A DNA stretch of 64,000 nucleotides from Schmidtea polychroa (lineage: Eukaryota). This document shows positions 13,601-61,831 of the stretch, in pieces. Under the pieces are notes generated by a model. It was not told the DNA's origin and made no database searches. It worked only from the letters and a program-made list of their open reading frames with translations. The translations under genes were made by a program, and so were the position numbers. Numbering within the stretch: position 1 is the first letter of the stretch; the number at the start of each line of letters is the position of its first letter. The DNA is taken from positions 107,632,001 through 107,696,000 of the forward strand of contig CM097886.1 of the NCBI GenBank assembly GCA_044892525.1. Reading direction: 5' to 3'.

Positions 13601-13678
13601 ACCTGTATACTTTCTCGCTTACCCTTCCAACATTCTCCCACTTTTCTGCCCCTTGAGGATATCCCATCAAATTTTCTG

Positions 13679-14773: not shown

Positions 14774-14955
14774 AAATTTTATTTCAATAAATATCAAAAT
14801 CAAATTATAACTTCTTTAATCTTTCTTATTTAAACAAATTTTCTACGAAGATATTTTAATTAAAATATCTTATTTTGTTTTTTTAAAAATTAATCTAAAC
14901 TTTAATTTTTAAAATTTTCAATTTAAAAATTTCTTCATCATAAAACTTCCTCATA
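14725..14955 (-). repeat. 5' LTR (231 bp)
   Basis: Direct repeat of 10385-10619. Confidence 0.95.
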
Positions 14956-36291: not shown

Positions 36292-36582
36292 TGAATGGTA
36301 TTTTAAAAAGCTGATTTGTCCACTCGGGATAAAAATTCACAGTTTGTATGAAACATCTACAATATAATATTTCTTCTTGTATAAATACGTCGTACATTAT
36401 TATATTTTTAGTGACATATGTATTTTCACAAACTTCCTTATGATGATCAGTTAAGTTAGGGTTTAAACAAAATTCACAGATCCAATTTCCATCAGAATAT
36501 CCAATGCCATACCTAGGTTTACATGTTATATTTCGTCCAAGTTTGGGAAACCTAGGAAACGTTGTCAATAAAGTCACCTTGG
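36292..36582 (-). CDS. Module exon (291 nt, phase 1-1) of the unannotated Cys-containing family, six-Cys subtype
   Basis: TTTTAG acceptor at 36584-36583 and GTAAAT donor at 36291. Aligns almost without gaps to 57208-57495 (KL---I-C---Y, W-CEFC--P-L, LYC-C, K-P). Confidence 0.7.
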
Positions 36583-36879
36583 CTAAAATGATAAAAGTAA
36601 AAGTAATATTAATATAAAACTAAAATTATTACTATTTTTATTTATTTTAGATTACAAAACTTTTCACGTTGATACAAAACCTAATTTTATCTTTGAGTAC
36701 AAATGCAGAATAATATTAAAAAATTTCAAAGGAATTGAAAAAATATAAATTTTTTTTATTGAAGGATTTCTATTTTAAACAAAATGTCATTGAAAAATAT
36801 TAGAATTTTCATTGTTATCAAAAATTATTTATTTTATTTACGTGGTTCAATAAGTAGTTAGACTCGTAAAGAAAGAAAA

Positions 36880-37640
36880 AAATAAACGCAAATATATTTC
36901 GTTTTGCAATGAGGAATTCCTGTAGTGTTTATTTCTCAAAATAATTTTCATTTAGAATTAATAGAACTCACATTTGTTTCTTATGTAAGTTTGAAGTATT
37001 AGATGGTATTAATTGGAACACCACATTCTGCAAAATTAGCTAAAAGAATGTCTTTGGAATCCTAAAACTTAGTCAAAATGAGGGCTTTCGGTGACTTGTT
37101 TATGACATCATCTTTATAAAACAGAACTATCCAATCAGGTTTCTCTTTACAGATTCCAGTTTACACTAAGGCAACATATAATGAAAGTAGCGTCTCATCC
37201 ATAATAATAATATTATGCAAAACTACTCTCCAACATCGTTCAAAATCTGAAGGTTCCCTTTGCAGCACTGCAGACATCGATTTCGCATTTTAGCAGTTAA
37301 AAAACGTAATACAAATCGAAACCATAATTTTCGTATACTCCTTTCATTGAGTAATACATAAATAGTGCTTTAACTTAATTTCAGGTGCATTGTTAAGTCA
37401 CTGGTTGTAATTTTACTCTCAGTTTGAACAACATTTTTAAGTTTTCTGTTAGGTTTACTTTGATTTTAAAAAGGACTTCCTGTTTTTTCACCATAAAACG
37501 AAGGTTCTACCACTCTGAAAGTAATTTTACCAACGAAATATTTTGCTTTTGATGAGCATTTAACACCATAAACAACACTCAACTCTGTATTGACTTCTTC
37601 TATACTCTTGCCTTTCATAAAAATGTAACGATATAATAAT
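36880..37640 (-). mobile_element. Degraded mariner transposase remnant
   Basis: Frameshifted fragments read in order YFQSGR, TIYVLLNE-RSIRKLWFRFVLRFLT, C-GNL, YF-HY and F-IPK, as in mariner HTH and DD34D regions. No TIR identified. Confidence 0.55.
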
Positions 37641-37798
37641 TATAACGATATTACTCCCTTTATATAGACATTTTAAAGTAAATGCTAAAATTTCTTAATT
37701 AAGTATTAACTAATTAAAGCAAATTTATTTACTTCTCTAAGAGTCTCAATACTTATTCTTTATCATCGTAATTCATTATAATAAAACAAATAGTAATA

Positions 37799-37863
37799 CA
37801 GGTAACCTTCCTACAACGCGGCATTTTTTAGGAACCTATCTACCGCGTTGTAGGAGGGTAGTA
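37799..37863. mobile_element. Small Tigger-type MITE remnant
   Basis: Inverted CCTACAACGCGG / CCGCGTTGTAGG; the same motif occurs at about 29390-29475. Confidence 0.5.
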
Positions 37864-38369
37864 TATTAATAAGTCTTATAAATCAAATAATAATAAATTT
37901 TAATATACCTTAATATATATCTTAATATATCTTAATAAATCTTATATATAATTGTGAATGTAAGTATGTATGTATGTTTGTTACAATTTCTAAATACGGA
38001 AATTTTTAAATTGAATCCAATATAAAAATCCTTATAAATCTTTATTATTACAAAAATATCACTTTACCCAATTTAAATTCTTAGGTTAAATCTGTTCAAT
38101 TCAGGTCAGCATTAATGTGGGTGACCATCAAAAAAATCCGGTAATGTAGTATTTTATTTTTGTCTAATCGTTCACCAAATACCTTTATTGCATTACATTA
38201 ACATTAAGCATTATGCCTTGCAATATATAAAACTGTATCTGTATCTGTCCACTATTTTAATCTATAGATATAAAAAATTAGTTCTTTATTATCATAAATA
38301 CAAAACCCTTATTTTATATCTTGAACTCATGACAATTATGAACCATTAATATAATGTGGTTTAAAATTA

Positions 38370-39195
38370 ATGAACCACGTTTGGTTCCAGATACGCAAAA
38401 AGCTTACAACGAAATTCTGAAGTTGTTGACAGATAAAAAGGGTTGTCTTATTTTTCTAGATGTACCTAGAGGGACAGGCAAGACATTCTTTATCAATTAA
38501 CTTCTTGCCAAGGTTCGCCAACAAAACAAGATTTCACTTGCAGTGGGCTCCTCAGAAATTGCCTCAACTTTGCTAGTCGAGGGACGAACTGCACACTCTG
38601 CCTTTAAATTACTACTAAACTTAGCTCAAGAAGAACAGCTTATTTGAAATATTGCCAAAGGATCAGGATCAGCTAAACTTTTAGAGAGGTGTAAGATCAT
38701 TGATTGGGAGAAGTGCAAGCGAGTGCTAAAAGCTATGGATCGAACACTTCAGGATTTGAGAGACAATAAGTCACTGATTGGAGGACTATTAGTTGTTTTA
38801 GCAGCTGACTTTCGTCAAAGTTTGAAAGCCATTCCAAGAATAACACAAGCTGATGAATAAATTGCTTGCCTGAAAGCTTCAGTTTGAGGCATGAAAAAAA
38901 TGTCTCAAAATTTTCCTCAAAACCTTTGTACATTCTATTCAATATATGTTGTCAATGGTTTTTCTAAACGCTAAAAACCACTATCAAAACCATGCCTGGC
39001 CTTGTGAAAAAGCTATCTTAGCACCAAAAAATCAGAAAGTCAATGATATAAAAGCACAGACTGTAAATCAATTGCAAGGGGAGACCAAAGTTTATAAGTT
39101 AATTGATACAGTTACGGAGAAAGCTCAAGCTGTCTTTTATCCAGCTGAATTCCTTAATTCATAGGAAACACCTAGCTTACCTTCCCACACCCACT
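38370..39195 (+). pseudogene. Helitron PIF1 helicase fragment
   Basis: FFLDVPRGTGKTF, GRTAHSAFKL, AMDRTLQDLR...GGLLVVLAADFRQ, AILAPKN and YPAEFLNS, with several stops. Confidence 0.92.
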
Positions 39196-39434
39196 GATTC
39201 ACGCTACTTTTAATAGAGTTTTTTATTGGTGTACATTATAATTATATAATTTAATGTTTCTCAATCCATTTTAAGATAATAATTTGATTTAGAAATAGGA
39301 GAAATTGAATGAAAAATAATAAAACTTTGAGAAAATTTAACTTTTAAAATTAAAAAAAAATTAGGAGACTATTCATACAGCTCGAAAAGAATTAATGTCA
39401 ATGACTGATGATTTCTTACTTTTATTTTTAGTAT

Positions 39435-39663
39435 TATGAGGAAGATGAAAGATTCTAAAAATGTTAATTAGAAATTTTGTTAAATTTTAAAAATATTTTT
39501 ATCGAGCAATATTTTAAAGAGAAGATTGAAATTTAGCATTTTTAAAAAAATATTTTTATCGAATAGATAAGTTTTGAGTGTATAATTTATTAAATAAAAT
39601 TTATGGAATTATTTAGGTATTTGTAAACCGATATTAATGGTTTAACGGAAGATAATCCTAATA
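39435..39663 (+). mobile_element. Solo LTR related to the 10385-14955 Gypsy family
   Basis: 229 bp, starts TATGAGGAAG and ends CCTAATA, with internal similarity to the LTRs. No PBS follows; the TSD is not clean. Confidence 0.75.
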
Positions 39664-40089
39664 ATCATAACGTCTATAGTGCATAAATGAACTTTTAATC
39701 TTATTGATTTTTAAGATTGCGTGTCAATTAAATTAAAAGTTTTTTTTTGTTTAAATGATTCAAATAAATGTGACACTCTTATAAAATAAACGATATTTCT
39801 TTCGTGAATTATACAATTATAAATGAGTGATCTTAAGAGAATATATAAAAAGATTTCATAATTGAAAAAGTTCAGGACCTATTCGAACAAAGTTATACAG
39901 GCAATATTTAGCCATTGGTACTTGCGGACTAAAAATTTATCATTAGCTTTGTAAAAGGTTACAAGGTATTCTTGAAATTAAAGAAATAGTGCAAAAAATT
40001 ATGATGTATCAAAACTATTAAAAACAGTGCCGGATCTTAAAGTATAAATTTAAAAAATCTATTTCATTTCACAAATAGTCATAACCTAC

Positions 40090-40398
40090 TTTTTAAAGGA
40101 AGATAAAAGTTTTCTTCGGTTTCCTTATCGTAAGGAGACAAATCCACTTTAGCCAAACAAGTACATTGGAAGGAATAATTCATATACATATAACTGTATG
40201 AAATAACGCCATCTTTAAAATAAATATTATCTAAAATATATTTATCCTGAGGAGACAAATTTGTCGCTGTGGCACCAATTGGTACAATATACTTTGTTCT
40301 TCCTATTTGACAATATAAAAATTTAGTATAGACGCTAGGTACATTTGTACAATGCCAGGCTGTGTCATTATATGTAGCATACCTCACTTGAGGCCAGC
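40090..40398 (-). CDS. Module exon (309 nt, phase 1-1) of the unannotated family
   Basis: TTTAAG acceptor and GTAGG donor. Same length as, and aligns with, 55349-55657 (ND(T/S)...CT, C-C--K----PY--E---NF-LP). Confidence 0.7.
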
Positions 40399-40632
40399 CT
40401 TAAAAAATTGAGTATTAAAAATAAAAAATGAATTTATTGATAACGGTTAAAATTCTATTAAGGATTTTAGAATTATTTAACTTTATTTTTGTTTTAAATA
40501 TAAAAATAATTAAATATGATTCGATTAATTTACATTATAATTTATGAACAAATGACAATTTAGTAGGTATAGTTAGCAAATACTTTGTCTATGATTGAAA
40601 GTTTTCTTTTTAATAAGTTACAATTTCTTTAA

Positions 40633-40872
40633 CCCTCTCCGTGTAAAAATTAATGCTGATATTTATAGTGACCCGTTCTATTACCACAAAAACGGTTACA
40701 AAATGTGCCTTCAGCTTCATCCCGATGGATTCAAAGCTGGAAAAGGGACACATCTTTCTGTTTTATTTTTCATAATGCGCGGTGAAAACGATGTACTTTT
40801 GCAATGACCTATGAAACTGAAAGTGACATCTTGCTTTAATGTCGAATATATTCGACAAATATACGGAGAGGG
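40633..40872 (+). mobile_element. piggyBac-type non-autonomous element carrying a TRAF MATH-domain fragment
   Basis: TTAA at 40629-40632 and 40873-40876; perfect TIR CCCTCTCCGT. The interior reads IYSDPFYYHKNGYKMCLQLHPDGFKAGKGTHLSVLFFIMRGENDVLLQ*PMKLKVT. Confidence 0.85.
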
Positions 40873-42232
40873 TTAATGTAAGGTATTTTCATTCGAGGAT
40901 TGAATATTTCAAGTGATTTGTAAAAAAATGATTTAAAATGAATTTAAATAGTAAATAACTAAAATTAGGAATAAAAATTTTATTAAATAGTAGAAAGATG
41001 TGTGGACTCAAGCCCAACAGGAATCCTCGACTCTCACAAACATTTTTTGGGTTAATAGGGGGTACCCGCTACTTTTTTTGAAACCCAAACCCCCATAAAA
41101 TTTTTGTTTTAACCAGCGATTACATAATATATTTAAATATTTTTAATCACCAATTACGTAATAATTTAAAAAACTTTAAATCGCTAATTACTTCATTAAT
41201 TTTAGTTTTTTATAATAACTATTTATATAAATATACTTGAAATTAAATTCTCTATTATATAAAACTATGACGTAATCAAAATTGTGAAAATTCATTTTTA
41301 GTTCACCAATTTTCAATTTACTCATATTTTTAAACAACTTGAGATATTTTAACTCAGAGAATATATAGAATTTAAATCTCCACAAAATGATATTATTATT
41401 TATTTCAAATTCATACTCATAACACCTTAAACAATGCCATTTTCAGCCAACCTTTACATACACACATTTCCAACATTTATTCATCTATACTTAAGAAAAC
41501 CCATTCTGTTATAAAAATATCATAATAAAAGACATTAAAAACTAAAAATTTATTAAAATCACAGAAATATTCTAGCGCTATTTACTCTCCAAATTGGTGA
41601 TATGACATATTTATCATCCATTTTATATTTACAAACTAGCTTTCCCCATCTTTATATTCAAATTCTTCAAATGCATCATGAAAACGTGAATTTCGGTTAT
41701 TGATGAATATATTTTCATTGCAACTTAGAATCTTGTTGATTTTACCTAACACTTTATTTACTGCAACATCTTTTTTTGTTATATTAAAAATGAAACTTGA
41801 ATACTGCGACTTGATCAATTTCAATGCATTTGATAATTTAAATGGAATTTCACCTCCCAAGAAATATATCTTATGGTTATGACACATGTGTACTGGTTTC
41901 ACATCTTTCTTGATTTGAACCTGTTTCACTCATTTTCTTAATTGCAATTGTTTCTTTGAATACAATAAATCTAAGAAATAATATTACTAATTATTTTTAT
42001 TAAATTTTATTATTAAATTTTATCAATCATTAATTAGTATTTTATTAATTGATATTAATAATTTTATTTCATTTTCATTCTTCTTTTTCTTATTATATAA
42101 TAATATTATTATTATTAGTGTCACTCATCGTGAAATATTTAATACTCAAAGTTCGAATTTAATAATTCATATAAAAATAAAGTATGTCAAGAACTCTTCA
42201 CCAAAAATAATTTAAATAGCTGAACACATTAA

Positions 42233-42234
<2 letters not shown>

Positions 42235-42281
<47 letters not shown>

Positions 42282-42282
42282 T
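42235..42282. repeat. (TTA)n microsatellite
   Basis: Seen directly. Confidence 0.9.
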
Positions 42283-42449
42283 CAAAGTATCGACCGAAAC
42301 CATGTACATCTTAAAAATTATTATTTAGAATTAATAAAATTACGACATAATATTTTCAAAATTAAATTCTATTACTCACCGTTGAAAATTAAATATCTAT
42401 TCTTCATTAAAAATCAATCAAATAATTTAACTAGATGTAAACATTATAT

Positions 42450-42580
42450 CAGTGGTACGCAAACTATGTGTCGCGGCATATTAGTGTGCCGTAAAAGAAT
42501 TTAAAATACATTCTTTCTATTTGTGCCTTGACTTTTTTTTTCTATTTTGTGCCGGGAGGTAAAAAGTTTGCGTACCACTG
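42450..42580. mobile_element. hAT MITE (131 bp)
   Basis: Perfect 16-bp TIR CAGTGGTACGCAAACT; flanks CATTATAT/AGTTATAT (6 of 8 match). Confidence 0.85.
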
Positions 42581-47270: not shown

Positions 47271-48073
47271 ATGCATTCCAAAGAAAATCCCAACTAAATA
47301 AAAAAATGATGCCAATTTTTATAACCATTTAGACACTTTGTTGTAACTATCTAATATCTTTTGCAGTCTGGTTTATCTAAAACGTGTTTTCGTACTAATT
47401 AAATGTTAATATAGTAATAAAAACAAATGTATATTAAATTAGAAAATAACACTGTCTTGCATAATGTCATTTTTTCATATTTCTCACACTTTATTATCTG
47501 TGTATTGTGGTGCTCTCATATGACTGCTTAGAGTACCATATAATTCCCAAGAAGACTAAATATTTATCATAAGGAAGAAAACGTAGTAAATTTTTACCAA
47601 AGGAAGAGAATACTAAGGGGGCCTATAAATATTTAGTAAAATTAACTTTTATTATTTAGTCTATATTTAGTAAATAAATATTTATCTTTCTTTTGCATTA
47701 TATATGTGTAGGATAACTGTAAATAAAACCTGTTTGAAAAATTATTATTTGTATGTATGTCTGATTATTATGTAATGTATATCTGAATGTCAAAGGTGTA
47801 ATATTGTATTATGGATGCATTTGTGTATCTTGCTCAAGATATTTACAATACAATTATTTCCTCGAGAGGGATAATAAATTATAATAAATTGAAATATTAG
47901 TCTTCTAACAATCGTCAAAAACAAATCTAAAAAATTATTTAAAATAAATAAAGAATATAATTATTGGAAAAAGTTCGTTTAAAATTTGATAATAAAATGA
48001 AAGAAATTGAATTTTTCTTATTCAATGCATTATAATATTAAAAATAATTGTGTATATTTCACAAAAATGAGAA

Positions 48074-48540
48074 TTAATTAAAAAATGAAAAATTTTCCAA
48101 ACTTGTTGTTGGCAGAACTCCATCATCGGTATAGACAGTCCCATTGATGGTTACTTCACATTTTACTGGAATGTCATACGGAGAAAACATTAAAGCAACT
48201 CTTAACAGATTCCCACCATAAACCTTAAAATTACGTAATACATATCGATTGTCAAATTCGTCTAATTGTGGATGTGATCTTTTAGGTAGTTCAATTAATA
48301 TTTGTTTTATTGTGCAGTAGAATACAACTTTGTCATAACTATCATAACCAAAGATTTTACATGTTACACGTGATTGGTAAGTTAAATTTGTTAGTTTGAC
48401 ATACACTCCTGAAGTTTTATATAAATTTTCAAAAAAACATTGTGAAAAACAAATTTACCTGACACGGACAGCACAAAAAAGTTAATAAGAATAGCAATAA
48501 CAATACTTGAATACTTAAAACCTAAACTCACTAAAATCAT
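48074..48540 (-). CDS. Signal-peptide exon plus module exon; putative secreted or surface protein
   Basis: Exon 48540-48459 encodes MILVSLGFKYSSIVIAILINFFVLSVS-G, followed by a 50-nt GT-AG phase-1 intron (48458-48409). Exon 2 is open to the stop at 48074 (138 aa total) or to a possible phase-1 donor at 48102. Paralogous to 54395-54712. Confidence 0.8.
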
Positions 48541-49476: not shown

Positions 49477-49680
49477 GGATTCTAGGACAAAATGGTAGAG
49501 GACAATATGGTACGGGCAAAATGGTACTAGGATTATAGGATTAAATGGCATGGACAAAGTGAATAAAACAATAGTAAAATACCATGTCACTTTAGATAGA
49601 CCATTGTATCGGTACTATTTTGTTTTCTATCATTTTGTCTCACCACCATTTTTTCGTTATAACTTTCCCTGTAAACCATT
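49477..49680. mobile_element. Foldback/MULE-like MITE with GGACAAAATGG-type subterminal repeats
   Basis: Repeated GGACAA(A/T)ATGGTA on the left and inverse CATTTTGT on the right; no clean TSD. Confidence 0.5.
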
Positions 49681-49841
49681 TATTAAATTTTCTTTATAAT
49701 TTCTGTATTTGTCTTTCAATTTGGCGTTCAGCCGTACTCGTTCCCCCCGTTCAGTATTGATTTTCGATTTTCAGTAAATTTTTAATTAATTTTGTACTTT
49801 TGTTGTTTGGACCTTTTTATTGATTTTAACAACATTTGTTA

Positions 49842-52800
49842 TAGGGTTCGGAATCCCGGGATCCCGCAATTTTTGGCAATCCCGAAATCCCGGGATCGAG
49901 CACTTGATCCCGGGATTTGACTTTTTAAGCCTAAAAAGAAAAATACCTTACAGTTTCCTTAAAAATTCTTTAAAACAATCGTTTTTGGTTGAACATTTTC
50001 AAATTTAAATTTTTTCGGTTGAGATTTGAATTTTGTCATATAGAAAATACTTGGAATTTTTTTTTGCATTCAAATTCTTAAAATATATAAATTTTAAAAA
50101 TCGAAATTCTTGGAACTTTTTTTTTCAATATTCAATTTGTAATTATATTCTTAAAATTTTTTGTTGGCGCTCAGACGTAATTAGTATATAATTGTTTTCA
50201 CGTGTTATTGTTTTTGATTATTTTAAAGTGTAGATTTAATTAAATTATCATTCGCACTATTTGAACAACAAATTTTAAAAATATAATGGTTTCTTACATA
50301 GACCATGAAAAGAAAAGTAATTCTGCTGTTTGGAAACATTTTTTACGAGAAGAAAAAGGACAGACAGCGATGTGTAAGTATACCGACTGCAAAAAAATTC
50401 TAAAAATTGGGGGTGGGTCAACGAAAGGTCTCCATACGCATCTACTTTCCGTCCATAAAATTAACATCACAACAGCTACTACTTCGGCTAACACATCAGA
50501 TGAACCACCAACAAAAAAATCGAAAACGTTAACCAAGTATTTTCCGATGCTGGAACGAGAAGAAAAATCACTTCCTGCTACACTTGCAAGGTTAACCGCA
50601 CTTGATAGGATTTCATTTAACGTTATATGCCAACGGTGGGCAAATGCGGCTCTTCGTTGAGTAAACTGCGGCTCTTTGATAATTGAATTTTTGATAATTG
50701 AATTTGAAAATTGAATTCGATTTTTTTATTTTGAAATTTTTTCAACTGAATTTTTAAAAAAAAATTTTTTGTTGCAATTGTATTTTCATGGTTAGTTCAT
50801 TTTTACCTGTGTCACAAAATAGGTGTAAACAGAATTAAAATTTATAGTGTCATTCGATGGCGGTATTTAGAATCAAAATTTAATATTTCCTTATTACATT
50901 CTACCTTGTTTCATTCTTTTTATAAGCAATATTTAAATAATACATGTCTCACTACACTATATACCAGGGGTGGGCAAGTGCGGCTCTTTGATGAGCCATG
51001 TGGCTCTCTAGGACCTCATGCGTGCCCACCCCTGTTATATGCCGTTCTTCTGATTTAAGTGCAGGTCTTATAGCAACATGATTCAAAATTTTACCTACAA
51101 CAGTCAACACAGTGCGCAAAATAGTTGTAGATTACAGCAAAAAAATTAAGAATTCATTAATTACGGAAATAGATGGCAAAAAAAACCACAATTCGGTGTT
51201 GGTGAGAGATTTTCCTTATCGTTTGATGAATGGACATCACTACGTAACCGTCGGTACATGAATATTAATTTACATGCTCAAAATTGTCAGTTCTGGAGCT
51301 TAGGCCTAATTCGAATAACAGGATCAATGCCTGCAGATAAATGTATTGAGCTCCTAGAACAAAAGCTCGCAGAATATGGACTTGATTTGCGAAAAGATAT
51401 CGTCGGAATTATGACTGACGGAGCAAGTGTAATGACAAAAGTTGGGAGATTATTACCTGTAAATCAACAATTATGTTTTGCCCATGGTGTGCAACTGGCC
51501 GTAATTGAAGTACTATATCAAAAGCAAAATATAGAAACAGATCAGCAATTCGACGAAGACGAACAATTAGAAGTAGAACACGATTTTTCGGAGAGTAACG
51601 ACGATGAAAATTTTACTGACAACGAAGAATTGGTTGATCTCGATTCTGGTCATAGGCATGGAGGAAACCAAAGTGATGTTACTGAGATAAATTCCGCTCC
51701 AGTGATCAAAAAGGTACGAAAATTGATAGTAATGTTCAGACGATCGCCAACAAAAAACGATATCTTGCAGAAATATGTTGCGGCTGAATTTGGGAAGCAA
51801 ATAACTCTAATAAAAGATTGCAAGACTAGGTGGAACAGCCTTTTGTCAATGCTTGAACGTATCTATTTATTAAAAAATTGTATTCAAAAGGCATTGATAG
51901 ACATAAGTCTACCTGAAGGTGAATCATTTGCTTTATCTAATGATGAGCTTAAAATGATATCTTCTATCATTAGTGCTCTAGTACCAGTAAAAGCAACAGT
52001 CGAGGCCCTTTGTCGTCGGGATGCTAGTCTGTTCACAACTATAACTTTTATGTTAAAAAACTTAAAGATTCTAACAACGTTATATGTCAAAAATTGCATT
52101 CAGCTCTCATTCTTCGCATGCAACAAAGGCGCACAGATATCAGTGGTGTACTTCAGTATTTACATAATGGTAGGACAAACGTTCAGTCCAAATCTGAAAT
52201 AGCGCTCGTAACAGTTCCATCTGCCGTAAAATGTCGCAAAATAATAGTTGAGTTACTCGAAAGATTAGATGCTGCAAATCCAGCTACAGCACTAACAGCT
52301 CATGAGTCCGAAGTTGAATCTTCTGTTTCAAATGAGGCACCTATCGAAATTGTTTCAGATTCTTCTGATTCTCCATCTGAATCTCTTTCCTTTTCTCTTG
52401 AACAACCTTTAACTATTGCAGACGAGCTCAATAAAGCTATAAAACAAGCACATTTTCCGAGGATGCCAATTCGATGTGAGATGCTGTCAGCGAAAATTCA
52501 AAAGGAAATGGTATTGTTTGAAAATGGAGGAACACGTGGTGATTTTTTGCAAAGAGCGTAAGATTTTCTAATGACAATCAAACCAACCAGTGTAGAGTCC
52601 GAACGTGCCTTTTCTGCGGCCGGACTTTTTGCAACGAGAATAAGAAGTCGTATGGGCGATGAAACTTTGGATGCACTATGCTTTCTTAAAAGTTATTTTA
52701 AAAATAACAAAGAATAATTAGGTATTTTTTTATAATTATTTAATAATTAAAAATGTAACTTTAACAATGAACTCTTTATAATTTATTAATTAAGAATATT

Positions 52801-53117
52801 ATAAACATAATGAATTTGATGTATAATATTATAAAAACATTTATTTTCTTTATAATTTAATAAACTAGTTTTTATAAACTTATTTTTGAATGTGTCATTT
52901 TTTTTAAATACCTGTTCTTGAAATATATTAACGGGATTTTTAAATACCTGTTCTTGAAATATATTAACATATTATTTTAACAAAATTAATCACTTTCTTT
53001 TTCTATTAATTTGGTTAAAATAGCATGTTAATATATTTCAAGAACATGTATTTAAAAATCCCGGGACTAATCCCGAAATCCCGGGATTGAAAATATAGCA
53101 CGGGATTGCCAACCCTA
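49842..53117 (+). mobile_element. hAT (Ac/hobo-like) transposon, near full length, inactivated
   Basis: TIR TAGGGTT(CGG/GGC)AATCCCG; perfect TSD ATTTGTTA at 49834-49841 and 53118-53125. BED finger (VWKHF...CKYTDCKK...HTHL), FDEWTS, DGAS, CFAHGVQL, TRWNS and PTSVESERAFS motifs are present, with stops and frameshifts. Confidence 0.96.
50631..51034. mobile_element. hAT MITE nested in the hAT transposase gene
   Basis: Perfect TSD TTATATGC at 50623-50630 and 51035-51042; ends CAACGGTGGGCA / TGCCCACCCCTG; a second left-end copy at 50965. Confidence 0.9.
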
Positions 53118-53446
53118 ATTTGTTATAGTTTCCATTTATATATTATTTTATTTCTGGTTTAAAAAACCAATTACTAGTCTTACTCTGAGCGTGTTATTTA
53201 ATAATGACAATGACAAGTTCCATTGACAAAAAACTTTATTGATTATCACAATTGATTACAACGAATTCAACGATACCAATTTTCAACACACCTCAACGAT
53301 TTCAAATGCTTATTACAACCCTTTGAGAAGAATAGCGCAACAATAATAATATTCTGAGAACACAAGCACTTGACTACTGCCGATAACGGGCGATTCACAA
53401 AAATGATCTAATCGTCTTTTTACTTGATTTGAATTCATCATCTAAT

Positions 53447-53790
53447 TCTGATGGTGGTCGGACAAAATGTTACCGGACAAAATGTCATGGACAAAATGTC
53501 GCGGACAAAATGTCATGTGGACATAAATGTGGTATAAATGTTGTTGATAATATACCATTGCGACATGTTGAGTGTGATCAGTACCTTTGCAACCAATACC
53601 CAAAAAAATATTTTGTCGGATAAACTCTGAGTATGTATATTTTGTCCACGACATTTTGTCCGCGACATTTTGTCTAAGACATATTGACCATGACATTTTG
53701 TCCGCGACCTTTTGTCCAATGACATTGTGTCCACATGACATTTCGTCCGGTGACATTCTTGTCTCTCGTCCAACTGTTTCCCTGACTCTC
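53447..53790. mobile_element. Foldback MITE built of GGACAAAATGTC / GACATTTTGTCC repeats
   Basis: The left-arm repeats are inverted in the right arm. The ORFs called here are translations of the repeats. Confidence 0.75.
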
Positions 53791-53953
53791 AATAATATAT
53801 TCTCAATAATAATCTCTTCTTAAATTTAATTCTCCTATAAAATTTATCCTTTAGCAAATTTCCCTCGTTGTAAGTTCCAGGACAACATCCCATTCACTTA
53901 TCATCATTTTACGAATTTAATAATTATTTTTATTTATTATACCAGTATTTTCA

Positions 53954-53954
<1 letters not shown>

Positions 53955-54015
<61 letters not shown>
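53955..54015. repeat. (CA)n(TA)n microsatellite
   Basis: Seen directly. Confidence 0.9.
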
Positions 54016-54020
<5 letters not shown>

Positions 54021-54282
54021 AAAAACCTATAGTTTAGCATATTGATATTATATTGAGTTTAAGATATAATTATTTATAATTATTAATTATGCAAATCTTA
54101 TATTGGAAATAATTTTTTTAATTATGAATTAATTTAATGAATACAAAATGGCATTTTTAAAATGAATTATATTATTTTTTTAGTTATTTAACAAAGATTT
54201 ACGATAACAATTAAAAATCTTAAACAAAAATTGAAGTGAGTTTTTATAACTTTATTTGTGAATTAATAATAGATGACAAATA

Positions 54283-54759
54283 GTGATAAATATCAAGAAT
54301 ATTTGTTTTAATATTATTTTCCTGGGAATGAATTTCTTCAATTTTAGTAAGGAATTTTAATTGTGAATATTATTTTGAAAAGCATAATTCTAAGAAAATT
54401 TGTTTGAATGTGATGAGTCGTTATCTATTTACAATGTCAACTTTAATGACACAGCTTTTTGTTTATACGGAGGAAGTATTCCAAATAAACAGGTGAAATA
54501 CAGTATCATCATTAGGAATATTTCTGTTCCAATCCCATTTCGTAAACACCCAAAATTATCAGATTATGAAAATTTTTACATTTTGCCGATGTTTAAAGCA
54601 ATTTTCCCAAATTTACTAAAAATATCTTTGGTATTCAGTCCGATTACAATTAGAGTATCCTGTACATTAAAATATACAAATCTTTATGCTGAAGATTATT
54701 TACAGGGAACAGGTTTTTTAATAATATTTCTTACAAAATTTTCCGTCATCTTAATTTAA
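54283..54759 (+). CDS. Paralog of the 48074-48540 gene; hydrophobic first exon lacks an in-frame upstream ATG (GTG start or pseudogene)
   Basis: Hydrophobic frame 54283-54346, 48-nt GTAAGG...TAAG phase-1 intron (54347-54394), then exon 2 containing P-R-HP-L--Y-N-Y-L--FK----NLL---L-FSP--I-V-C. Possible donor after 54712. Confidence 0.65.
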
Positions 54760-55348
54760 AAATTTTTCATATAATGCTTTGTAATTTTTGAAGTGTGTCA
54801 ATCAAAACAAACATTTATTATAATAACATCTGATCATCATATAAACAATTGTTTATTTATTATAAGAACCTGTTTCATATTTCACCACTGATTTCTTTTC
54901 AATTGACATTTTGTAATTTGTTTAATGTATATTGCACTTTGGTGTTTTGTTAGGTAAAATCAGAAAAGGATTATACTCGTTTTTTCCTATCCTTGTTGTT
55001 TACAATCTCTTTACTCCCTGAAACTCTTTAAGAAATTTGTCAATTATCAAAGATTTTGACTTCTTTGCAGTTGTAGTTGTCAATCTGTGGGTTGTAGAAT
55101 TTTGAGGGTAATAATTGACAAATTTATGCTGCAAGAAGAAATAATACCAAGAAAAACCTGAGGCTAGAAATTAGAAGTCAAAAGGATAAAAAGAAAAAAG
55201 CTTTTATTGGTTCTGAAGGACATAAAACATTCTCCACTTGAAAGGTTTATTTCAAAAATTTTAAATTATAATTTATTTAATTTCTATCTAATACGAATAT
55301 CTGAAACATGTTGTGTTTAAATAGTACTACAGTTTGATTTTTATTTAG

Positions 55349-55657
55349 AATTTCCATTACTTATTGAAGAACGTGTAGCAAACGATTCTCTAAAATGTAC
55401 AAGCAAATGGAATTATTATAATATATCTTTCATGTGTATTTTTAATAACATTAAAACACAAATTGGAAACTTTCCTGTTCCGTTTTATTTATCGAATGAT
55501 TTAATTTATATCTACAAAACTGTTAATGTTTTAGATAACATTGTTTTATTTAATTATATATTTTTGAACCTTTCAATAAATTGTCAATGCATTGGGAAAT
55601 TGGAATCTGAACCTTACAAAATTGAAAAAGACTTAAATTTCACCCTTCCTAAAAGAG
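55349..55657 (+). CDS. Module exon (309 nt, phase 1-1), paralog of 40090-40398
   Basis: TTATTTAG acceptor and GTAAAT donor. Reads FPLLIEERVANDSLKCTSKW...INCQCIGKLESEPYKIEKDLNFTLPKR. Confidence 0.7.
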
Positions 55658-55868
55658 GTAAATGTAATTATAATTAGTAGTAAAAAAAATTAATTATTCA
55701 CTTTTAAATTAATTAAATATAAATTAATAAGATTAATATGTATTATTCTATTTAAGAAAAAGAAATCTAGTCAAGTTTAATAATTATCGTTTTACATGCG
55801 TCGATAATTCACACGTTTTTCTATATTTTAAATAATTTATGAGGATATAATATAACATTTTTACAATA

Positions 55869-55950
<82 letters not shown>
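55869..55950. repeat. Palindromic (AAT)n(TTA)n microsatellite
   Basis: An AAT run of about 40 nt directly followed by its inverse. Confidence 0.9.
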
Positions 55951-57207
55951 TATATTTAATTATAATATTAAATTTCTTGGTAGCGACATAAACTAAATGT
56001 TAATGAAATAAATTATGTGATGGGACTTTTGCTATAAAATATGTACTGAATGAATGAACATTTGATTATATGACAATATTATTATTATTCCATTATTTTA
56101 TAATTATTTTTACAAAGATTTTTTAAACTTTAATCCCATTGTGCATCAAACGAACCAAGACCCACAAAAAACGATAAGTGATACCCTGCCCAGAAAATAT
56201 TTTCAATTTAAATTAATTTTAAAAGGCACGCCAAAAATCTTTAAACAAAAACATATTCAAAGCCGCTATATAAGAGTTTGCAGGAAAATTAAAACAAACG
56301 GGAAAACTTTCTTCGAAACACCCGAATCAACGGATTTTGTTTTTATCAATGCGTCGGAGGAATGTGTCTAAAAGCTATTATATCATTTAATCGACGCCGC
56401 CGCATGTATTAACTCAAATAGAAATTCATCATTGAATGGTGTATCCCACAGCTTCGACGATTTCCGGCTTTTGTAAACATTCTAAGTCCATTTAATGGTA
56501 TTTGTACCAGTGTCATCATTAGAATCTAATTTTTTCCAAAGATTGGAAAGAAATTAAAAAAAGTCAAGTAAAAGTACTAATCGATCTAATTAGGATGTTG
56601 AAGCCGAGCTTACCTTTTAAATGTATAACTTTACAATAATTTTTCGAATTCATTAATTCAATTTATTTTGGATTTGAAAGAGAAAGTTTACATTTGAACA
56701 GTTATGGAGAAATTTAGCGGCATGCAAAATGATCCTAAGAAAGTCATACTATGCAAATAATAGTATTAAAAAGAAATTACTTTTTTAGGAGCTTCAATCA
56801 GTGCTAGACCTGTCTAAACTACGGATATAAAGATTTCAAAAAAAAAGATTGGTAAACAGTTGAGTAAGAGAGACCCGATGATTATTTACCGTTCTTATTT
56901 ACCAATATGCTTCCCTAACTTTTCACCCTCAAATTAGCATTTGTTTCGATTTTTACACGATTCTCTTAATTGTTAAATTCGAATTCCCTTCAAACCTGTG
57001 AAATTGATCCATCAAAATTCATTATTCATTAAAGAGGGATTCTTCGAGGTATAGTCCATGAGATTACAGAGGTTGTGAATCAAAATTACCAATATATTAT
57101 TTAATAAGACTCTTTTTGTTAACAAAATTTCTATCGTTTTTACAATTTTAGTAATTTCATAAATTAATTATTTTGACAATTTATCATTTCGTATATCTCG
57201 GATTCAG

Positions 57208-57495
57208 AGCCTCAGTTGATGACAATTAGTCAGCCACAAAAATTACGTCAACCCATATCCTGCATTTTTCTATACACTAAATTCAAGGTATCAATCCAAT
57301 GGGTTTGTGAATTCTGTCGAAAACCGAAATTAGATGAGGATGAAAAAAATATTTGCGGTTACTATAGGGTTGTTCAGAGTGAAATTACATTTAATTTCGA
57401 CTTCCAATTTCGTACAGATTTGTATTGTAAATGCATTTGTTATATTAGTGATTTCTTCCTTCCATACTCATTCGCTATGCTAAAAGTCCCAATAG
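57208..57495 (+). CDS. Module exon (288 nt, phase 1-1), six-Cys subtype, paralog of 36292-36582
   Basis: TTCAG acceptor at 57206-57207 and GTAAC donor at 57496; six Cys with conserved spacing. Confidence 0.7.
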
Positions 57496-57549
57496 GTAAC
57501 ATTATTCAATTTTACAATTAATAATGGTGAAGGAGCGATTGCCATTTAA

Positions 57550-58120
57550 CCCTTTCAACACTGAATTTTATTTATTCAGAAAATGATTAATTTTTTATAA
57601 TAAAACTATTAGTTACTAACATCATTAGAACTTTGTAGAAGACTTTCTTCCACCATTTAGCTGTCCTTCTATTCAGGTCGTAAACGGCCACAAGTTGGTC
57701 ACAGAGGTCTACACCGCCCATTTTCTCATTATAAAAAAGATGACAGAAATAATTTTTCAAAAATGTTTGGGATATAAAATATCCCAGAAGTGTTGTAAGG
57801 TTTAAACCTTTATAACAAGTTCTACTAAAAAAATTAATTAAATATTCAAATGTATTTTTTTCTCCGTTTAATAAACACAAATAAGACCAAGTACGGTGAC
57901 GAGTTTCAGAATTCAGTTTTATTCATAAAAAAAATTTAATTCAAAGATTTATGAGAAAATTTGGGTGTCATTATGTAGCACACAGAAAAATATTCAATAT
58001 GTAATATTTAGCACCAAAATTTGTCAGAGCATTCGAATCCATATAATGTAAGGAATCATTTTTGTGAAAATGAACCTTAACAACAACCAATTTCAAGGTT
58101 TATTTATGGACGAAAACCTC
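57550..58120 (-). mobile_element. piggyBac transposase remnant with one intact terminus
   Basis: TTAA|CCCTTT at 57546-57555; FYNEKMGGVDLCDQLVAVYDLNRRTAKWWKKVF. The other boundary is uncertain. Confidence 0.8.
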
Positions 58121-58714
58121 TAAAATCAACCCAGATGTATCATGATATAATTATGGATCGTATTAAGTAAACTTAAAACAACTGAAAAACAAATACAAGT
58201 GAAAATTTTTTAAAATTTAATTTTAATTTTAAATTTAAATTTATATGTTACTCTGGTTTGTTTCATGGGAAAATAATTTTGATAATTAATTCTTTTTATC
58301 GAATTGTTCACTTCTTTCATATTTATTTATAATATAAAATGAAATAACCATGTCAATGATTCAATAATTAAAAAATATCACTCAAGCATCATTTTAAGAT
58401 ATATTTCGACAGTCTCATTGTCATCATTATAAAGAATAGAAATAAATAGATATTATAAATTAATTTTAGATTACAAAACCATTTTGCAGTTTTACCTAAG
58501 CGTTACTCGGCCACAAATTTTTTTCGCACACAAATCCGAGTCTTGTTCAAGCAAATCTTGTTTCAACTTGTTGATAGTTGTTCGTAGTCCTTAGTCGTGT
58601 TACGGTGTGTGTTACGGCATTGTGTATCATTGTCATATTCTAACTTGAATTTAACCACTTTTCTGTTATTTTTATTCACATTTTAGACAGAAGTACATAA
58701 AAAATAAGTATATA

Positions 58715-60470
58715 CAGTCAAACCCCGCTTTATCGCCATTTGAGAAAAAAAATATTTTTGGCGATAAAGCGGGGTGGGTTTTGAATAAAATAATTAAAAA
58801 ACAAATAAAAAATCAACCTTGTTTATTAATAAATCTCATTATGTCATTATTTCAAAGTCATTTTCTCCTTTTAATCAAATCTTTCTAAAAATCCTTTAAT
58901 TAATTTCAGTGATTGTGATATTTTCGGCCTTGATTTTTTAGATTGATCAATAAATTTCAAAATAACTTCCAAAGCACATTGAGCTTCTTCAAATTTTATA
59001 TCTGGAAGTTCTGGTGTTGCTTCAATTTCAATCATTGAAATGTCAGTAGTTTCAATGTTATCATTTGTACATATTCAATGAACTCTTGATCATTTAATAT
59101 ATTTGAAGATGTTAAGACTTCATCAACTGACATAAAACTCTCAAATGAAATCACGTTTTCAGGGCCCAATCTATTTGCCATTTTTGCGTATAGCAATTCT
59201 AAGCTTGAATTAGATGTTGATATTTCCTCAGTAGCATTTCGTTGAGGTTCAATGGGTAATAAATTAGATTTTCTCCGTGAATTATTAATTGTTTCGGGTG
59301 TTACACTGCATGACACTATGACACCATCTTATAACCTCATCAAAAGGTAATCTGTATTCAATATTATTATCTATATTATTAACTTTTTCAATAGTTGTTT
59401 TTTATAATAATGCTTAAAGTTTTTTATTATACCTTAATCCATTGGCTGAACATATTACGTAAGTTATGGATCAAAAAATAAAAGTTTAATATTTTCAAGT
59501 GACTCATTTAAATGACTATGAGATGAAGTATTATCAACTAACAATACAATTTTTTTATTCCTATAGACAAGTTCTTCATCAAATTTAAGACCCAATCCTT
59601 AAATAGGTCAGCAGTCATCCAAGCCTTTTTATTAGGTTTATAATCACAATGAGCTTACAAAGACGTTTTTAAATGATCTATGTTTTTTAGATCTACCAAT
59701 GATTAGCATTTCTCTTTTCTCTGTTCCTGTGGCATTGGAACATTAAGCTATAATAGTTCTTACCTTTGGCTGCTTAATAGCCTGGATTATTCCATTGATA
59801 CTTAAAGACTTTTCTCCTCGATATTCAATGAACAATCCTGTTTCATCTATGTTAAATATGTTTCCTGGCTCATATACTGATAGTCCAACCTTTAATCTTT
59901 CATGACATTAGCTTAAATTTTACTTAGAAACCGAACCAGATTCTCCGGATAAAGAATAGCATTTTATTCGATTCCTTTTTTTAAATCGAGTTATCCATCC
60001 ATTTGATAACTTAAGATCGGAAATATTTAGTAATTTGGCAAAGCTTTTACCTTTTTCAACTAATAAGTCTTGATTAATTACTGCATTTTGCTCTCTTCTC
60101 TGAACAAACCTACAAATAAAGCGCCTCCTCAAGTTCAGGATATTTTGGACGTTTAATAAAATCTGTGTTTTAATTAAACGTCGTTTGAAACTACTTTTCT
60201 CGGTATGTTTTATTATCACCTATTGTACGCCTAATATCCATGGAAAATTTGGCAGAAAAATGTGTTGCAACTTTTTTTTTTAATTAGAAACTCCACGACT
60301 TCCTTCTTTTCGGCTCGGAATTAAACGACTTCGTGTTCTTTTCTTAGTCATATATGGGTATTTTAACTATGGGGGTAAAAATGTAAAATGGCGGTAAAAT
60401 TGGGTAAAAACATTAAAAATAAATTAAAACAAATTATAAAGCGGGATGGCAGTATATCGGGGTTTGACTG
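58715..60470 (-). mobile_element. Decayed Tigger/pogo transposon
   Basis: TA-flanked TIR CAGTCAAACCCCG; CENP-B HTH (LSNGWITRFKKRNRI...SGESGSV); fragments AWMTADLF, LLVDNTSSH and QPMD. Confidence 0.92.
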
Positions 60471-60550
60471 TATACTTATTTTTATAATTGATTTTATTTT
60501 AGTTTTAGCCCAAAATGTTCTACGCCAATTATGAATATTTCGAGGATATA

Positions 60551-60723
60551 CAGTCGAATCCGCTTAATATCACGGGGTGCGGCCGATATATAAATGTGAT
60601 ATAAACCGAATGTGCTATTAAGCGAATATTCGAGTGTATTATCTACGGTTTTTGTTCTACATCTTGGCGTGATAATAAGCGTATTGTGATATAAAACGAT
60701 GTGCTATTAAGCGGATTGTACTG
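60551..60723. mobile_element. Tigger-type MITE
   Basis: TA-flanked TIR CAGT(CG/AC)AATCCGCTTAATA. Confidence 0.85.
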
Positions 60724-61150
60724 TATTGATAAGTGAATCAGGCAATAAAATAAAGTTTCAAAACATACCATAACAAAAAAAACTTATTGAATACTTATAC
60801 TATAAAATAATAAACATTGTATTAATATTATTTGTTAACCATATTTTAATAAAATGTAAATAAAAAATTTGGCAATTATTGGACACCTTTCGCACTGAAA
60901 TCCATCTGCTATGTGGTTAAAATACTTATTTAAACATTCATTACATTTGAAAATTACAACAACAATACATATACTGTCAATTTAACATCATTACTATTCA
61001 GAAACATTCAACACATACGTTTTGACAATATTCTGCAAGTTAATTTTGGATCCAACGATCTTATTAATGATGCTTCACATATCTCACTTTCTCAATAATT
61101 ATTAAAACTTTTTAATAGATTTTCGTGATACATATCTTTATTTTCCATAG

Positions 61151-61831
61151 GAGAACCAAAAATGACCTTCGTTCCTCCAGTCTTTATATTTGATCATTTC
61201 ATTGAATGTCGCATAATGTATTATAAATTATTCATTCAATTCTGGAGATGTCAACATAAAAGTAATTTCATTGTTTTGAATGAGTCCGTTAATATTGGAA
61301 TAACTGACTATGAATTGAAATACTTTTACAATTCCTTTCAAGTGAAAAAGAAGCTATTAATTGTAAAAAGATCATGGCTCAAAACTAGAGTACACTGTCA
61401 ATGTTTCCTCCAATTGATCAACCCAATCACAATTTTAAACCAATACATTCAGTTCACAGTCCCGAATTTCGGTATGTTTAAAACGTTAAAAATGTAAAAT
61501 TAATATTGTAAAAGATCTATTTAAATCCATTTCTATTAACTGTTCTTATCATTGCCAATACAATGTCTTTCAAAAAAATGTAATTAAAATAACAGCCAAT
61601 TATAATTTTCCGGAAATATTGAAATATTCACAATTTCTGATTGGTTTGTCCGATATTAATTTTACGGTAGTTTCAACCAATCCGGAATCGCATTTTATTT
61701 ATCCGATTATTTCCAATGTTAGTGATTTTGGAATGAGATGTTCAAGACTCTCTTGGAAGGTTACTTGGATTAATACAAATAATAGTTTACTTAGTGGAGC
61801 ATGGCCAATCATGTTTTATAGTACATTCTAA
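61151..61831 (+). CDS. Two consecutive module exons of the unannotated family (61151-61471 and 61515-61820/61831)
   Basis: CCATAG acceptor; 321-nt exon (EPKMTF...IECRIMYYK...WRC...HCQCF...FTVP); 43-nt GTATGT...AAAG intron; second exon open for about 105 codons, with a phase-1 donor giving 306 nt. First exon not identified. Confidence 0.7.

What the first reader, a model, noticed from the sequence alone, without database searches (positions are those of the whole stretch)
36292..61831. Dispersed unannotated gene family built from symmetric phase 1-1 exons of about 100 codons
Seen: eight open frames bounded by AG and GT in phase 1, all multiples of three: 291, 309, 306 (donor tentative), 318 (donor tentative), 309, 288, 321 and 306 nt. 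They form clear paralog pairs: 36292/57208 (six Cys, W-CEFC), 40090/55349 (identical 309 nt) and 48103/54395 (HP-L...NLL...FSP). Several begin with P-(K/Q/L)-(M/V/L) and end C-C...P. One member has an intact signal-peptide exon, and one locus has two modules in tandem. Established: phase 1-1 exons of this size are typical of shuffled extracellular modules such as Ig-like or FN3 domains. Inference: a fast-diverging secreted or surface protein family expanding in TE-rich DNA, for example variant antigens or receptors. The ORF track shows these only as truncated fragments.
Basis: partly seen in the sequence, partly recalled or inferred. Interest (0 to 1): 0.7.

Follow-up and report, generated by a model that had tools for sequence, protein, structure and literature searches.

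The report
Planarian cluster of Ig-like secreted genes
The eight "modules" are the exons of two neighbouring, head-to-head genes that belong to a cluster of about 12-13 flatworm-only genes for proteins made of strings of very divergent immunoglobulin-like domains; they look like real coding genes, but no transcript evidence was found and their function is unknown.

Summary
The open frames are real. Seven are AG/GT-bounded, phase 1-1 exons of 288-321 nt at the stated coordinates. The eighth is a terminal exon that ends in TAA.

They are not a dispersed set of single modules. They are the ordered exons of two old paralogous genes lying head to head:
- Gene 1 (minus strand): signal exon, then modules C, B, A.
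- Gene 2 (plus strand): modules C', B', A', D, E, then stop.

Profile searches of the genome (Schmidtea polychroa schPol2) find 13 C, 11 A, 33 B-like and 11 E modules. Apart from seven B-like modules at 66.8 Mb, all lie at 105.8-108.4 Mb of one chromosome scaffold and keep the order C-B-A-D-E. This is a tandem cluster of about 12-13 genes with 3-7 modules each.

AlphaFold models of the C and A modules (pLDDT 95 and 81) are beta-sandwiches, and their best structural neighbours are Ig domains of adhesion molecules. Pfam, a profile search of 1.84 billion proteins and two further searches found no sequence relatives.

Gene 1 has a good signal peptide and gene 2 has no membrane segment, so the products are probably secreted. 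Contigs of three probable RNA runs cover only repeats here, so expression is unshown. Each window gene also lacks one canonical part: gene 1 lacks D-E and gene 2 lacks a signal exon.

Verdict: a new, lineage-restricted family with an Ig-like fold. Its function is inferred only.

The parts
48459..48540 (-). Gene 1, exon 1: ATG plus a 27-codon signal peptide (h-region IVIAILINFFVLSV, then SVS|G) with a phase-1 donor GTAAAT
48103..48408 (-). Gene 1, C-type module exon (306 nt, phase 1-1). The 50-nt intron after the signal exon precedes it
40090..40398 (-). Gene 1, B-type module exon (309 nt, phase 1-1)
36292..36582 (-). Gene 1, A-type module exon (291 nt, phase 1-1; six Cys plus Trp). It is the last module found for this gene. 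Reading through the donor reaches a stop after 9 codons
54395..54712 (+). Gene 2, C-type module exon (318 nt, phase 1-1). No signal exon was found upstream
55349..55657 (+). Gene 2, B-type module exon (309 nt, phase 1-1)
57208..57495 (+). Gene 2, A-type module exon (288 nt, phase 1-1)
61151..61471 (+). Gene 2, D module exon (B-like, 321 nt, phase 1-1)
61515..61831 (+). Gene 2, E-type terminal exon (317 nt including the TAA at 61829-61831), separated from D by a 43-nt intron
57590..60219 (-). Transposon debris inside the 3.6-kb A'-D intron of gene 2: a piggyBac-type transposase fragment (57590-57922) and a Tc5/pogo HTH fragment (59923-60219). Not part of the coding sequence
50265..52561 (+). 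hAT-like element (zf-BED ORF plus long ORFs) in the 5.8-kb spacer between the two divergent genes. Not part of the family

Best explanation
The region holds two adjacent, divergently oriented members of a planarian-restricted tandem gene cluster of about 12-13 genes on one chromosome of Schmidtea polychroa.

Each gene encodes a signal peptide followed by a chain of 3-7 modules of about 100 residues, with one module per symmetric phase-1 exon. The canonical order is C-B-A-D-E. C and A, the two modules modelled, are highly divergent disulfide-containing Ig-like beta-sandwiches. B-like and D are related to them by sequence, and the fold of E is unknown.

The products are most likely secreted soluble proteins that act as extracellular binding or recognition molecules. 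The family diversifies by tandem gene duplication, by exon (module) duplication and loss that the phase 1-1 symmetry permits, and by rapid amino-acid change around a fixed Cys/Trp scaffold.

Shown: the exons, phases, order, family census and fold; the signal peptide in gene 1; and the absence of a TM segment in gene 2.

Inferred: splicing, secretion of all members, and the binding or recognition role.
For: Exon and phase structure:
- Searches show it in the window and across the family.
- Across the family, C exons are 297-318 nt with one outlier of 345 nt, and A exons are 285-294 nt.

Gene order and spliced frames:
- The order is C-B-A on the minus strand and C'-B'-A'-D-E on the plus strand.
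- The spliced frames stay open: gene 1 gives 329 aa, and gene 2 gives 516 aa then a stop.

Whole-genome profile census:
- It finds 13 C, 11 A, 33 B-like and 11 E modules.
- Almost all are stop-free.
- Apart from seven B-like hits at 66.8 Mb, all lie on C2 at 105.8-108.4 Mb in the same order.
- D and E are always about 45-50 nt apart.

Sequence conservation:
- Cys, Trp and Pro columns are invariant at 25-35% identity.
- C and B types are homologous by hhalign (probability 92.6%, E 5e-7).

Fold:
- AF2 gives the C module pLDDT 94.9 and pTM 0.85, and the A module 80.7 and 0.70.
- Structural neighbours are almost all Ig domains: NCAM Ig1 at Z 9.2, rmsd 2.5 A over 85 residues, and MDGA1 Ig3 at Z 7.5.

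Secretion:
- Gene 1 has a signal peptide.
- Plausible phase-1 signal exons lie upstream of four other members.
- Gene 2 has no 19-residue hydrophobic segment.

Diversification:
- Module number varies among paralogs and their similarity is mosaic.
- The B exon of one young pair is more diverged than its flanks (85.8% versus 91.6%, p=0.03).
- Nominal dN/dS is about 2 in two young pairs.
Against: - There is no transcript evidence. Contigs of three probable RNA runs of this species cover only repeats in 53900-57700. These runs are small, and their RNA label is itself a guess.
- Neither window gene has the full canonical set. No D or E module or remnant follows gene 1's A exon. No signal exon was found for gene 2.
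- The dN/dS values do not differ significantly from 1, so they fit relaxed constraint as well as positive selection.
- The structural Z scores (7.5-9.2) are only at or slightly above the tool's stated background.
- No Ig Pfam model matches, so the Ig-like fold does not prove IgSF homology.
- The E module is not detectably related to the others and was not modelled.
Confidence: 0.7

Rival explanations
1. The cluster was once functional, but the two window copies (and perhaps many others) are now silent, decaying pseudogenes: gene 1 is a 3'-truncated copy and gene 2 a 5'-truncated copy.
For: - Gene 1 lacks D and E.
- Gene 2 lacks a recognisable signal exon, and a hAT element sits in the spacer.
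- No RNA contigs cover the exons.
- dN/dS is not below 1 in young pairs.
Against: - All nine exons are stop-free in a genome where 8.5% of random codons are stops.
- They keep every family-invariant Cys, Trp and Pro.
- Their AG/GT sites are intact and in phase.
- One young C-exon pair is significantly more conserved than its flanks (p=9e-4).
Confidence: 0.2
2. The proteins are membrane-anchored receptors (true 'surface' molecules) whose TM or GPI exon was missed.
For: - Several E-type paralogs carry 10-17 mostly hydrophobic residues after the conserved W-IM-YS motif before their stop. This could be a GPI signal.
- Many multi-Ig recognition families are membrane proteins (PMC9546547).
Against: - Gene 2 ends in TAA five codons after that motif, with no hydrophobic tail and no in-phase donor.
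- The maximum 19-residue hydropathy in gene 2 is 1.56.
- No further family module or exon was found after E in any member.
Confidence: 0.07
3. The modules are cargo or coding parts of a transposon or an integrated virus (for example the Polinton-like element at the start of the window), or are chance open frames.
For: - The region is full of mobile elements.
- The structure atlas lists phage proteins with Ig-like domains among its neighbours.
Against: - Copies are confined to one chromosomal interval, in a fixed module order, with introns of variable length.
- They are 25-35% identical, not near-identical.
- They carry no transposase, RT or capsid domain.
- The TE ORFs lie in introns or spacers, on either strand.
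- Chance is excluded by the mutual similarity and the copy number.
Confidence: 0.02

Closest known systems
Hydractinia Alr genes of the allorecognition complex (Huene et al. 2022, PMC9546547)
   Same: - A large family clustered in one genomic interval.
- Extracellular domains that lack the diagnostic Ig sequence motifs and were recognised as Ig-like by structure prediction.
- Invariant cysteines, and highly diverse sequences among paralogs.
   Different: - Alr proteins are transmembrane, with ITAM/ITIM tails and a V-set domain 1. Here no TM or cytoplasmic part exists in the one gene with a complete 3' end.
- The phylum differs (flatworm versus cnidarian).
- No sequence comparison with Alr was made.
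- Nothing here shows polymorphism or a role in allorecognition.
Canonical I-set/C2-set Ig domains of adhesion molecules (NCAM, MDGA1, nectins, sDscam, VCAM-1)
   Same: - Best structural neighbours of both modelled modules.
- One domain per phase-1 exon, as is usual for IgSF genes (general knowledge).
- The A-type pattern C-x12-W ... YCxC has the spacing of the Ig B-strand Cys, C-strand Trp and F-strand Cys.
   Different: - No Pfam Ig model matches, even at E<=1.
- Sequence identity to the structural neighbours is 8-18%.
- Extra cysteines are present (CxFC, CxC).
- A helix replaces part of the C'-D region in the models.
- These genes have no FN3, TM or GPI parts.
Schistosome micro-exon genes (MEGs) and other flatworm secreted orphan families
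   Same: Lineage-restricted, secreted, made of symmetric exons that allow modular variation, and clustered.
   Different: MEG exons are tiny (general knowledge) and encode no folded domain. Here the exons are about 300 nt and each encodes a full beta-sandwich domain.

Membership tests
Immunoglobulin superfamily (Ig-like fold) | Two-sheet Greek-key beta-sandwich of 7-9 strands and about 100 residues | tested here: met
   AF2 models of the C and A modules have 8 strands plus one helix. Nearly all top PDB neighbours are Ig domains: Z 9.2 to NCAM Ig1 and Z 7.5 to MDGA1 Ig3. The B, D and E modules were not modelled.
Immunoglobulin superfamily (homology) | Significant match to an Ig sequence profile (Pfam ig, I-set, V-set, C2-set) | tested here: not met
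   There are no Ig family hits at E<=1 for any of the eight modules, and no PDB sequence hits with the A-type profile.
Immunoglobulin superfamily (homology) | Conserved B-strand Cys, C-strand Trp and F-strand Cys forming the core disulfide | tested here: inconclusive
   The A type has invariant C20, W33 and C74/C76 with Ig-like spacing. The B type has C16, C29, C78 and C80. The C type has C16 and C83 but Phe where the Trp would be. Disulfide geometry in the models could not be inspected.
Exon-shuffling type modular extracellular genes | Each domain on its own exon with phase 1 at both ends | tested here: met
   Seven window exons are phase 1-1. In-phase AG/GT pairs are present at all C-type and A-type paralogs, giving exons of 285-345 nt.
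Secreted proteins | N-terminal signal peptide and no membrane anchor | tested here: inconclusive
   Gene 1 has a clear signal exon, and four other members have plausible ones. Gene 2 has no TM segment but also no signal exon found. No dedicated predictor was available.
Hydractinia Alr-type allorecognition receptors | Single-pass TM and a cytoplasmic tail, often with ITAM/ITIM | tested here: not met
   Gene 2 terminates right after module E with no hydrophobic segment.
Transposable element or viral gene | Linked transposase, RT, integrase or capsid domains; dispersed near-identical copies; terminal repeats | tested here: not met
   The modules have no such Pfam domains. Copies are confined to one interval and are 25-35% identical. 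TE ORFs lie in introns or spacers only. Terminal repeats were not searched for.

The most novel reading that the evidence does not exclude
The cluster is a planarian-specific, rapidly diversifying locus of secreted Ig-like recognition proteins. Its modules are swapped, duplicated and positively selected. It would serve immune, self/non-self or mating recognition, as a flatworm counterpart of Hydractinia Alr or snail FREP systems that arose from Ig-like domains too diverged for sequence methods to recognise.
Probability: 0.15. Interest if true: 0.7.

Novelty: new variant of a known kind. Interest (0 to 1): 0.42.

Why it matters
Planarians are a major regeneration and stem-cell model, yet their extracellular recognition and immune molecules are poorly known and many of their genes are orphans. 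This is a family of about a dozen multi-domain Ig-like proteins that no sequence method recognises. It is organised like classical exon-shuffled IgSF genes and diversifies by module gain and loss.

If the genes are expressed, they would add to the small set of 'cryptic' invertebrate Ig families and give candidates for planarian pathogen, self or mate recognition. It also shows that reading open frames exon by exon can turn two ordinary multi-exon genes into an apparent 'dispersed family'. If the genes are silent, the finding is a modest note on gene-family turnover.

Tried and rejected
- **Pfam on all eight modules.** Only noise came back: Kinase-PolyVal at E 0.11 and TRA-1_regulated at E 0.07.
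- **A-type profile against 1.84 billion representative proteins.** The two hits (E 1.6e-5 and 6e-5) are Cys-rich or W-CPxC repeat proteins and were judged spurious on inspection.
- **The search for homologous proteins.** The C-type alignment and a 252-aa D-E open frame both returned nothing. The tool's length window of 0.55-1.75x means full-length relatives of about 500 aa could have been missed.
- **ESM atlas by features.** Nothing usable for C (best 0.82) or E.
- **PDB sequence search with the A profile.** Noise only.
- **RNA support.** Contigs of the probable RNA runs X5-X7 laid on 53900-57700 cover only repeat bins, while DNA run X3 covers the whole stretch. This counts as no support, not as evidence of silence.
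- **Signal exon for gene 2.** None was found between 48600 and 54394. The only hydrophobic candidate (53538-53580) lies in a stretch whose opposite-strand ORFs resemble those of a repeat seen elsewhere in the window.
- **D/E modules or remnants for gene 1.** None found by HMM or tblastn.
- **E module versus B or C by hhalign.** Not related (E 0.28 and 0.4). A versus B is only weak (E 3e-3, probability 9.5%).
- **Positive selection.** dN/dS is 2.1-2.2 in two young pairs but not significant.
Full report
**Setting.** The window is G000:C2:107632001-107696000. It has about 27% G+C.
- Contig C2 is 189,691,935 bp long. That is exactly the N50 given for the Schmidtea polychroa assembly schPol2 in Table 1 of PMC11410931, which lists 781 Mb in 1013 contigs.
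- The genome searched here has 781,270,316 bp in 1012 contigs. The species name in earlier scan notes is therefore confirmed.
- The window is rich in mobile elements: Ty3/gypsy pol, a Polinton-type double-jelly-roll capsid, a hAT zf-BED ORF, and piggyBac and Tc5/pogo fragments.

**Checking the observation.** Seven of the eight frames are as described. Each is open only in phase 1, preceded by AG after a T/A-rich tract, and followed by GT.
- The lengths are 291, 309, 306, 318, 309, 288 and 321 nt.
- The eighth frame begins at the acceptor 61514|61515, after a 43-nt intron, and runs to the TAA at 61829-61831. It is the last coding exon, not a GT-bounded cassette.
- The signal exon at 48540-48459 (-) has an ATG, 27 codons with a 14-residue hydrophobic core and an SVS|G cleavage-type end, and a phase-1 GTAAAT donor. 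A 50-nt intron separates it from the next exon.
- The three paralog pairs are real: 26-30% identity, E 1e-11 to 2e-15 in the small all-against-all search.
- With stops at about 8.5% of random codons, a 100-codon open frame has probability about 1.4e-4. Chance is excluded.

**What the eight frames really are.** The pairs are arranged as a mirror image.
- On the minus strand the order is C (48.1 kb), B (40.1 kb), A (36.3 kb).
- On the plus strand it is C' (54.4 kb), B' (55.3 kb), A' (57.2 kb), then D (61.15 kb) and E (61.5 kb).
- These are two genes lying head to head, each reading C then B then A.
- An HMM scan of all six frames of the window finds exactly these eight modules and nothing else.
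- Joined at the proposed sites, gene 1 gives an open 329-residue frame: signal peptide plus three modules.
- Gene 2 gives 516 residues followed by the stop, with no internal stop.
- At 26-30% identity, the two genes are old paralogs and not a recent inverted duplication.

**The family in the genome.** Single-sequence and profile searches of the whole assembly give these counts:

| Module type | Copies |
|---|---|
| C | 13 |
| A | 11 |
| B-like | 33 |
| E | 11 |

- Nearly all copies are free of stops.
- All lie on contig C2 at 105.82-105.87 Mb and 107.46-108.37 Mb, except seven B-like modules at 66.80 Mb.
- Sorting the hits by position gives about 12-13 genes with the same order, C-B-A-(B-like)-D-E. 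Most are on the plus strand.
- E always follows a B-like 'D' module by about 45-50 nt.
- Three members were fetched in full. They have four modules (C-B-D-E), six (C-B-D-E-D-E) and seven (C-B-A-B-B-D-E).
- Module number therefore changes by exon duplication and loss, which the phase 1-1 symmetry allows without breaking the frame.
- In-phase AG and GT sites are present at all C-type and A-type paralogs. C exons are 297-318 nt, with one outlier of 345 nt, and A exons are 285-294 nt.
- The family is a tandem cluster, not a dispersed one.

**What the modules are.** Within each type the paralogs are 22-39% identical but keep invariant columns:

| Type | Invariant or conserved positions |
|---|---|
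| C | N7, C16, P41, N53, L57, F74, C83 |
| A | C20, W33, C35, C38, C51, C74, C76, P95 |
| B | C16, C29, C78, C80 |
| E | invariant N8, C75, W80, W84, G94, W96; the N-terminal INCSxPC Cys pair is present in most copies |

- C and B types are homologous by profile-profile comparison (probability 92.6%, E 5e-7 over 101 columns).
- A versus B is weak, though it aligns over the full length with the cysteines matched (E 3e-3).
- E is not detectably related to either.
- AlphaFold2 with only ten paralogs gives confident models. The C type has pLDDT 94.9 and pTM 0.85, and the A type has 80.7 and 0.70. Both have eight strands and one short helix.
- Foldseek hits are weak (E about 1e-2, TM 0.4-0.6), but nearly all hits in the PDB are Ig domains.
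- The exhaustive aligner puts NCAM Ig1 first for C (Z 9.2, rmsd 2.5 A, 85 residues). It puts MDGA1 Ig3, NCAM Ig1 and VCAM-1 first for A (Z 6.9-7.5). Nearly all of the top 50 in both lists are Ig domains.
- These Z values are at or only slightly above the tool's stated background. I therefore claim an Ig-like fold, not proven IgSF homology.
- The A-type spacing C20...W33...Y-C74-x-C76 is what an Ig B-strand Cys, C-strand Trp and F-strand Cys would give.

**No sequence relatives.**
- Pfam finds nothing.
- The A-type profile against 1.84 billion representative proteins returns two Cys-repeat false positives.
- Word-seeded searches with the C alignment and with a D-E open frame return nothing.
- The atlas and PDB sequence searches return nothing usable.
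- The two word-seeded searches have length limits, and the sister-species genomes could not be searched. 'Planarian-restricted' is therefore the cautious reading.

**Secreted or anchored.**
- Gene 1 has a good signal peptide.
- Plausible phase-1 signal exons, or a fused leader, lie upstream of four other C exons.
- Gene 2, the only window gene with a complete 3' end, has no 19-residue segment above 1.56 on the Kyte-Doolittle scale. It stops five codons after the conserved W-IM-YS motif.
- Some E paralogs have 10-17 hydrophobic residues before their stop, so a GPI anchor in some members is not excluded.
- Both proteins are rich in Cys (13 and 21) and in N-x-S/T sequons (7 and 11).

**Are they alive?** There is evidence on both sides.
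- *For.* About 70 exons stay open across very old divergence in a stop-rich genome. Structural residues are invariant and splice sites stay in phase. One young C-exon pair is more conserved than its flanks (96.8% versus 90.9%, p=9e-4).
- *Against, or neutral.* Contigs of three probable RNA runs of the species touch only repeats in 53900-57700, while a DNA run covers it all.
- In two young pairs dN/dS is about 2.1-2.2 (9N:1S and 40N:5S), not significantly different from 1. In one of them the B exon has diverged more than its flanks (85.8% versus 91.6%, p=0.03). That pattern fits diversifying selection, but also relaxed constraint.
- Each window gene lacks one canonical part. No D/E modules or remnants follow gene 1's A exon. 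No signal exon precedes gene 2's C' exon, and a hAT element occupies the spacer.
- I therefore give about 0.2 to the reading that the two window copies are no longer functional, even though the family as a whole has clearly been under coding constraint.

**Mechanism proposed.** These are secreted chains of disulfide-stabilised Ig-like domains that act as extracellular binding or recognition proteins.
- They diversify through tandem gene duplication and through module duplication and loss.
- They also exchange segments. One fetched member is closest to a second in its C exon (93% nt) and to a third in its B and D-E exons (88-98%).
- They change surface residues on a fixed scaffold.
- The target (microbe, mate, self or matrix) is unknown.

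**Comparison with what is known.**
- The closest analogue in concept is the Hydractinia Alr family. [quoted passage not shown]
- Those proteins are transmembrane with ITAM/ITIM tails, which is not the case here.
- A literature search for planarian IgSF families found nothing comparable.
- Another reader of this scan noted a different 'Ig-like A+B exon' array 17.5 Mb away. My profiles did not hit that region, so at the sequence level it is probably a separate family.

**Verdict.**
- This is a new sequence family, so far seen only in this planarian, of a well-known kind: multi-Ig-like secreted proteins built from phase-1 exons.
- Interest is moderate, limited by the lack of expression and functional evidence.

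Noticed in passing
G000:C2:66798575-66807437 (locus L019 covers 66800196-66803381): A separate locus 41 Mb away holds at least seven B-like modules on the minus strand. Two of them lie in one uninterrupted 244-codon open frame, so the intron between them is lost or open. This may be a distinct gene of the same superfamily built only from B-type modules.
   Followed up: partly
G000:C2:107753001-107777000, 107863001-107879000, 107947001-107971000 (L041-L048): Three cluster members show mosaic kinship. The middle gene's C exon is 93% identical to that of the third gene. Its B exon (89%) and D-E pair (97-98%) match the first gene. It also carries a tandem duplicate of the D-E pair. This suggests unequal crossing-over or gene conversion inside the cluster.
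   Followed up: partly
G000:C2:105841109-105841423 and 105872940-105873254 (L009, L010): Two C-type exons 31.8 kb apart give identical open frames and flanks in the fetched loci. This points to a very recent segmental duplication at the distal sub-cluster.
   Followed up: no
window 307-891 and 4608-5381 (-): ORFs with a double-jelly-roll capsid-like domain (PF21738, E 2e-11 for 4608-5381), flanked by N-masked blocks. This is a Polinton/Maverick-type element, as other notes on this window say.
   Followed up: partly
window 10722-14815 (-): A largely intact Ty3/gypsy-type retroelement: a 731-codon open frame (11547-13739) carries protease, RT and RNase H, and a gag-like frame (13682-14815) and an integrase-like frame (10722-11543) flank it. 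Gag-like fragments of the same family lie at 7619-7888 and 16918-17274.
   Followed up: partly
window 1637-1960, 3056-3367, 53445-53819: A repeat family gives similar ORF fragments in three places. Two of them abut N-masked blocks. The third lies 600 bp upstream of gene 2's first module and contains the only hydrophobic ATG-started mini-frame there, so it could mimic a signal exon.
   Followed up: no
The site lies inside the 7.7-kb C-B intron of gene 1 and is unrelated to the family.
   Followed up: no
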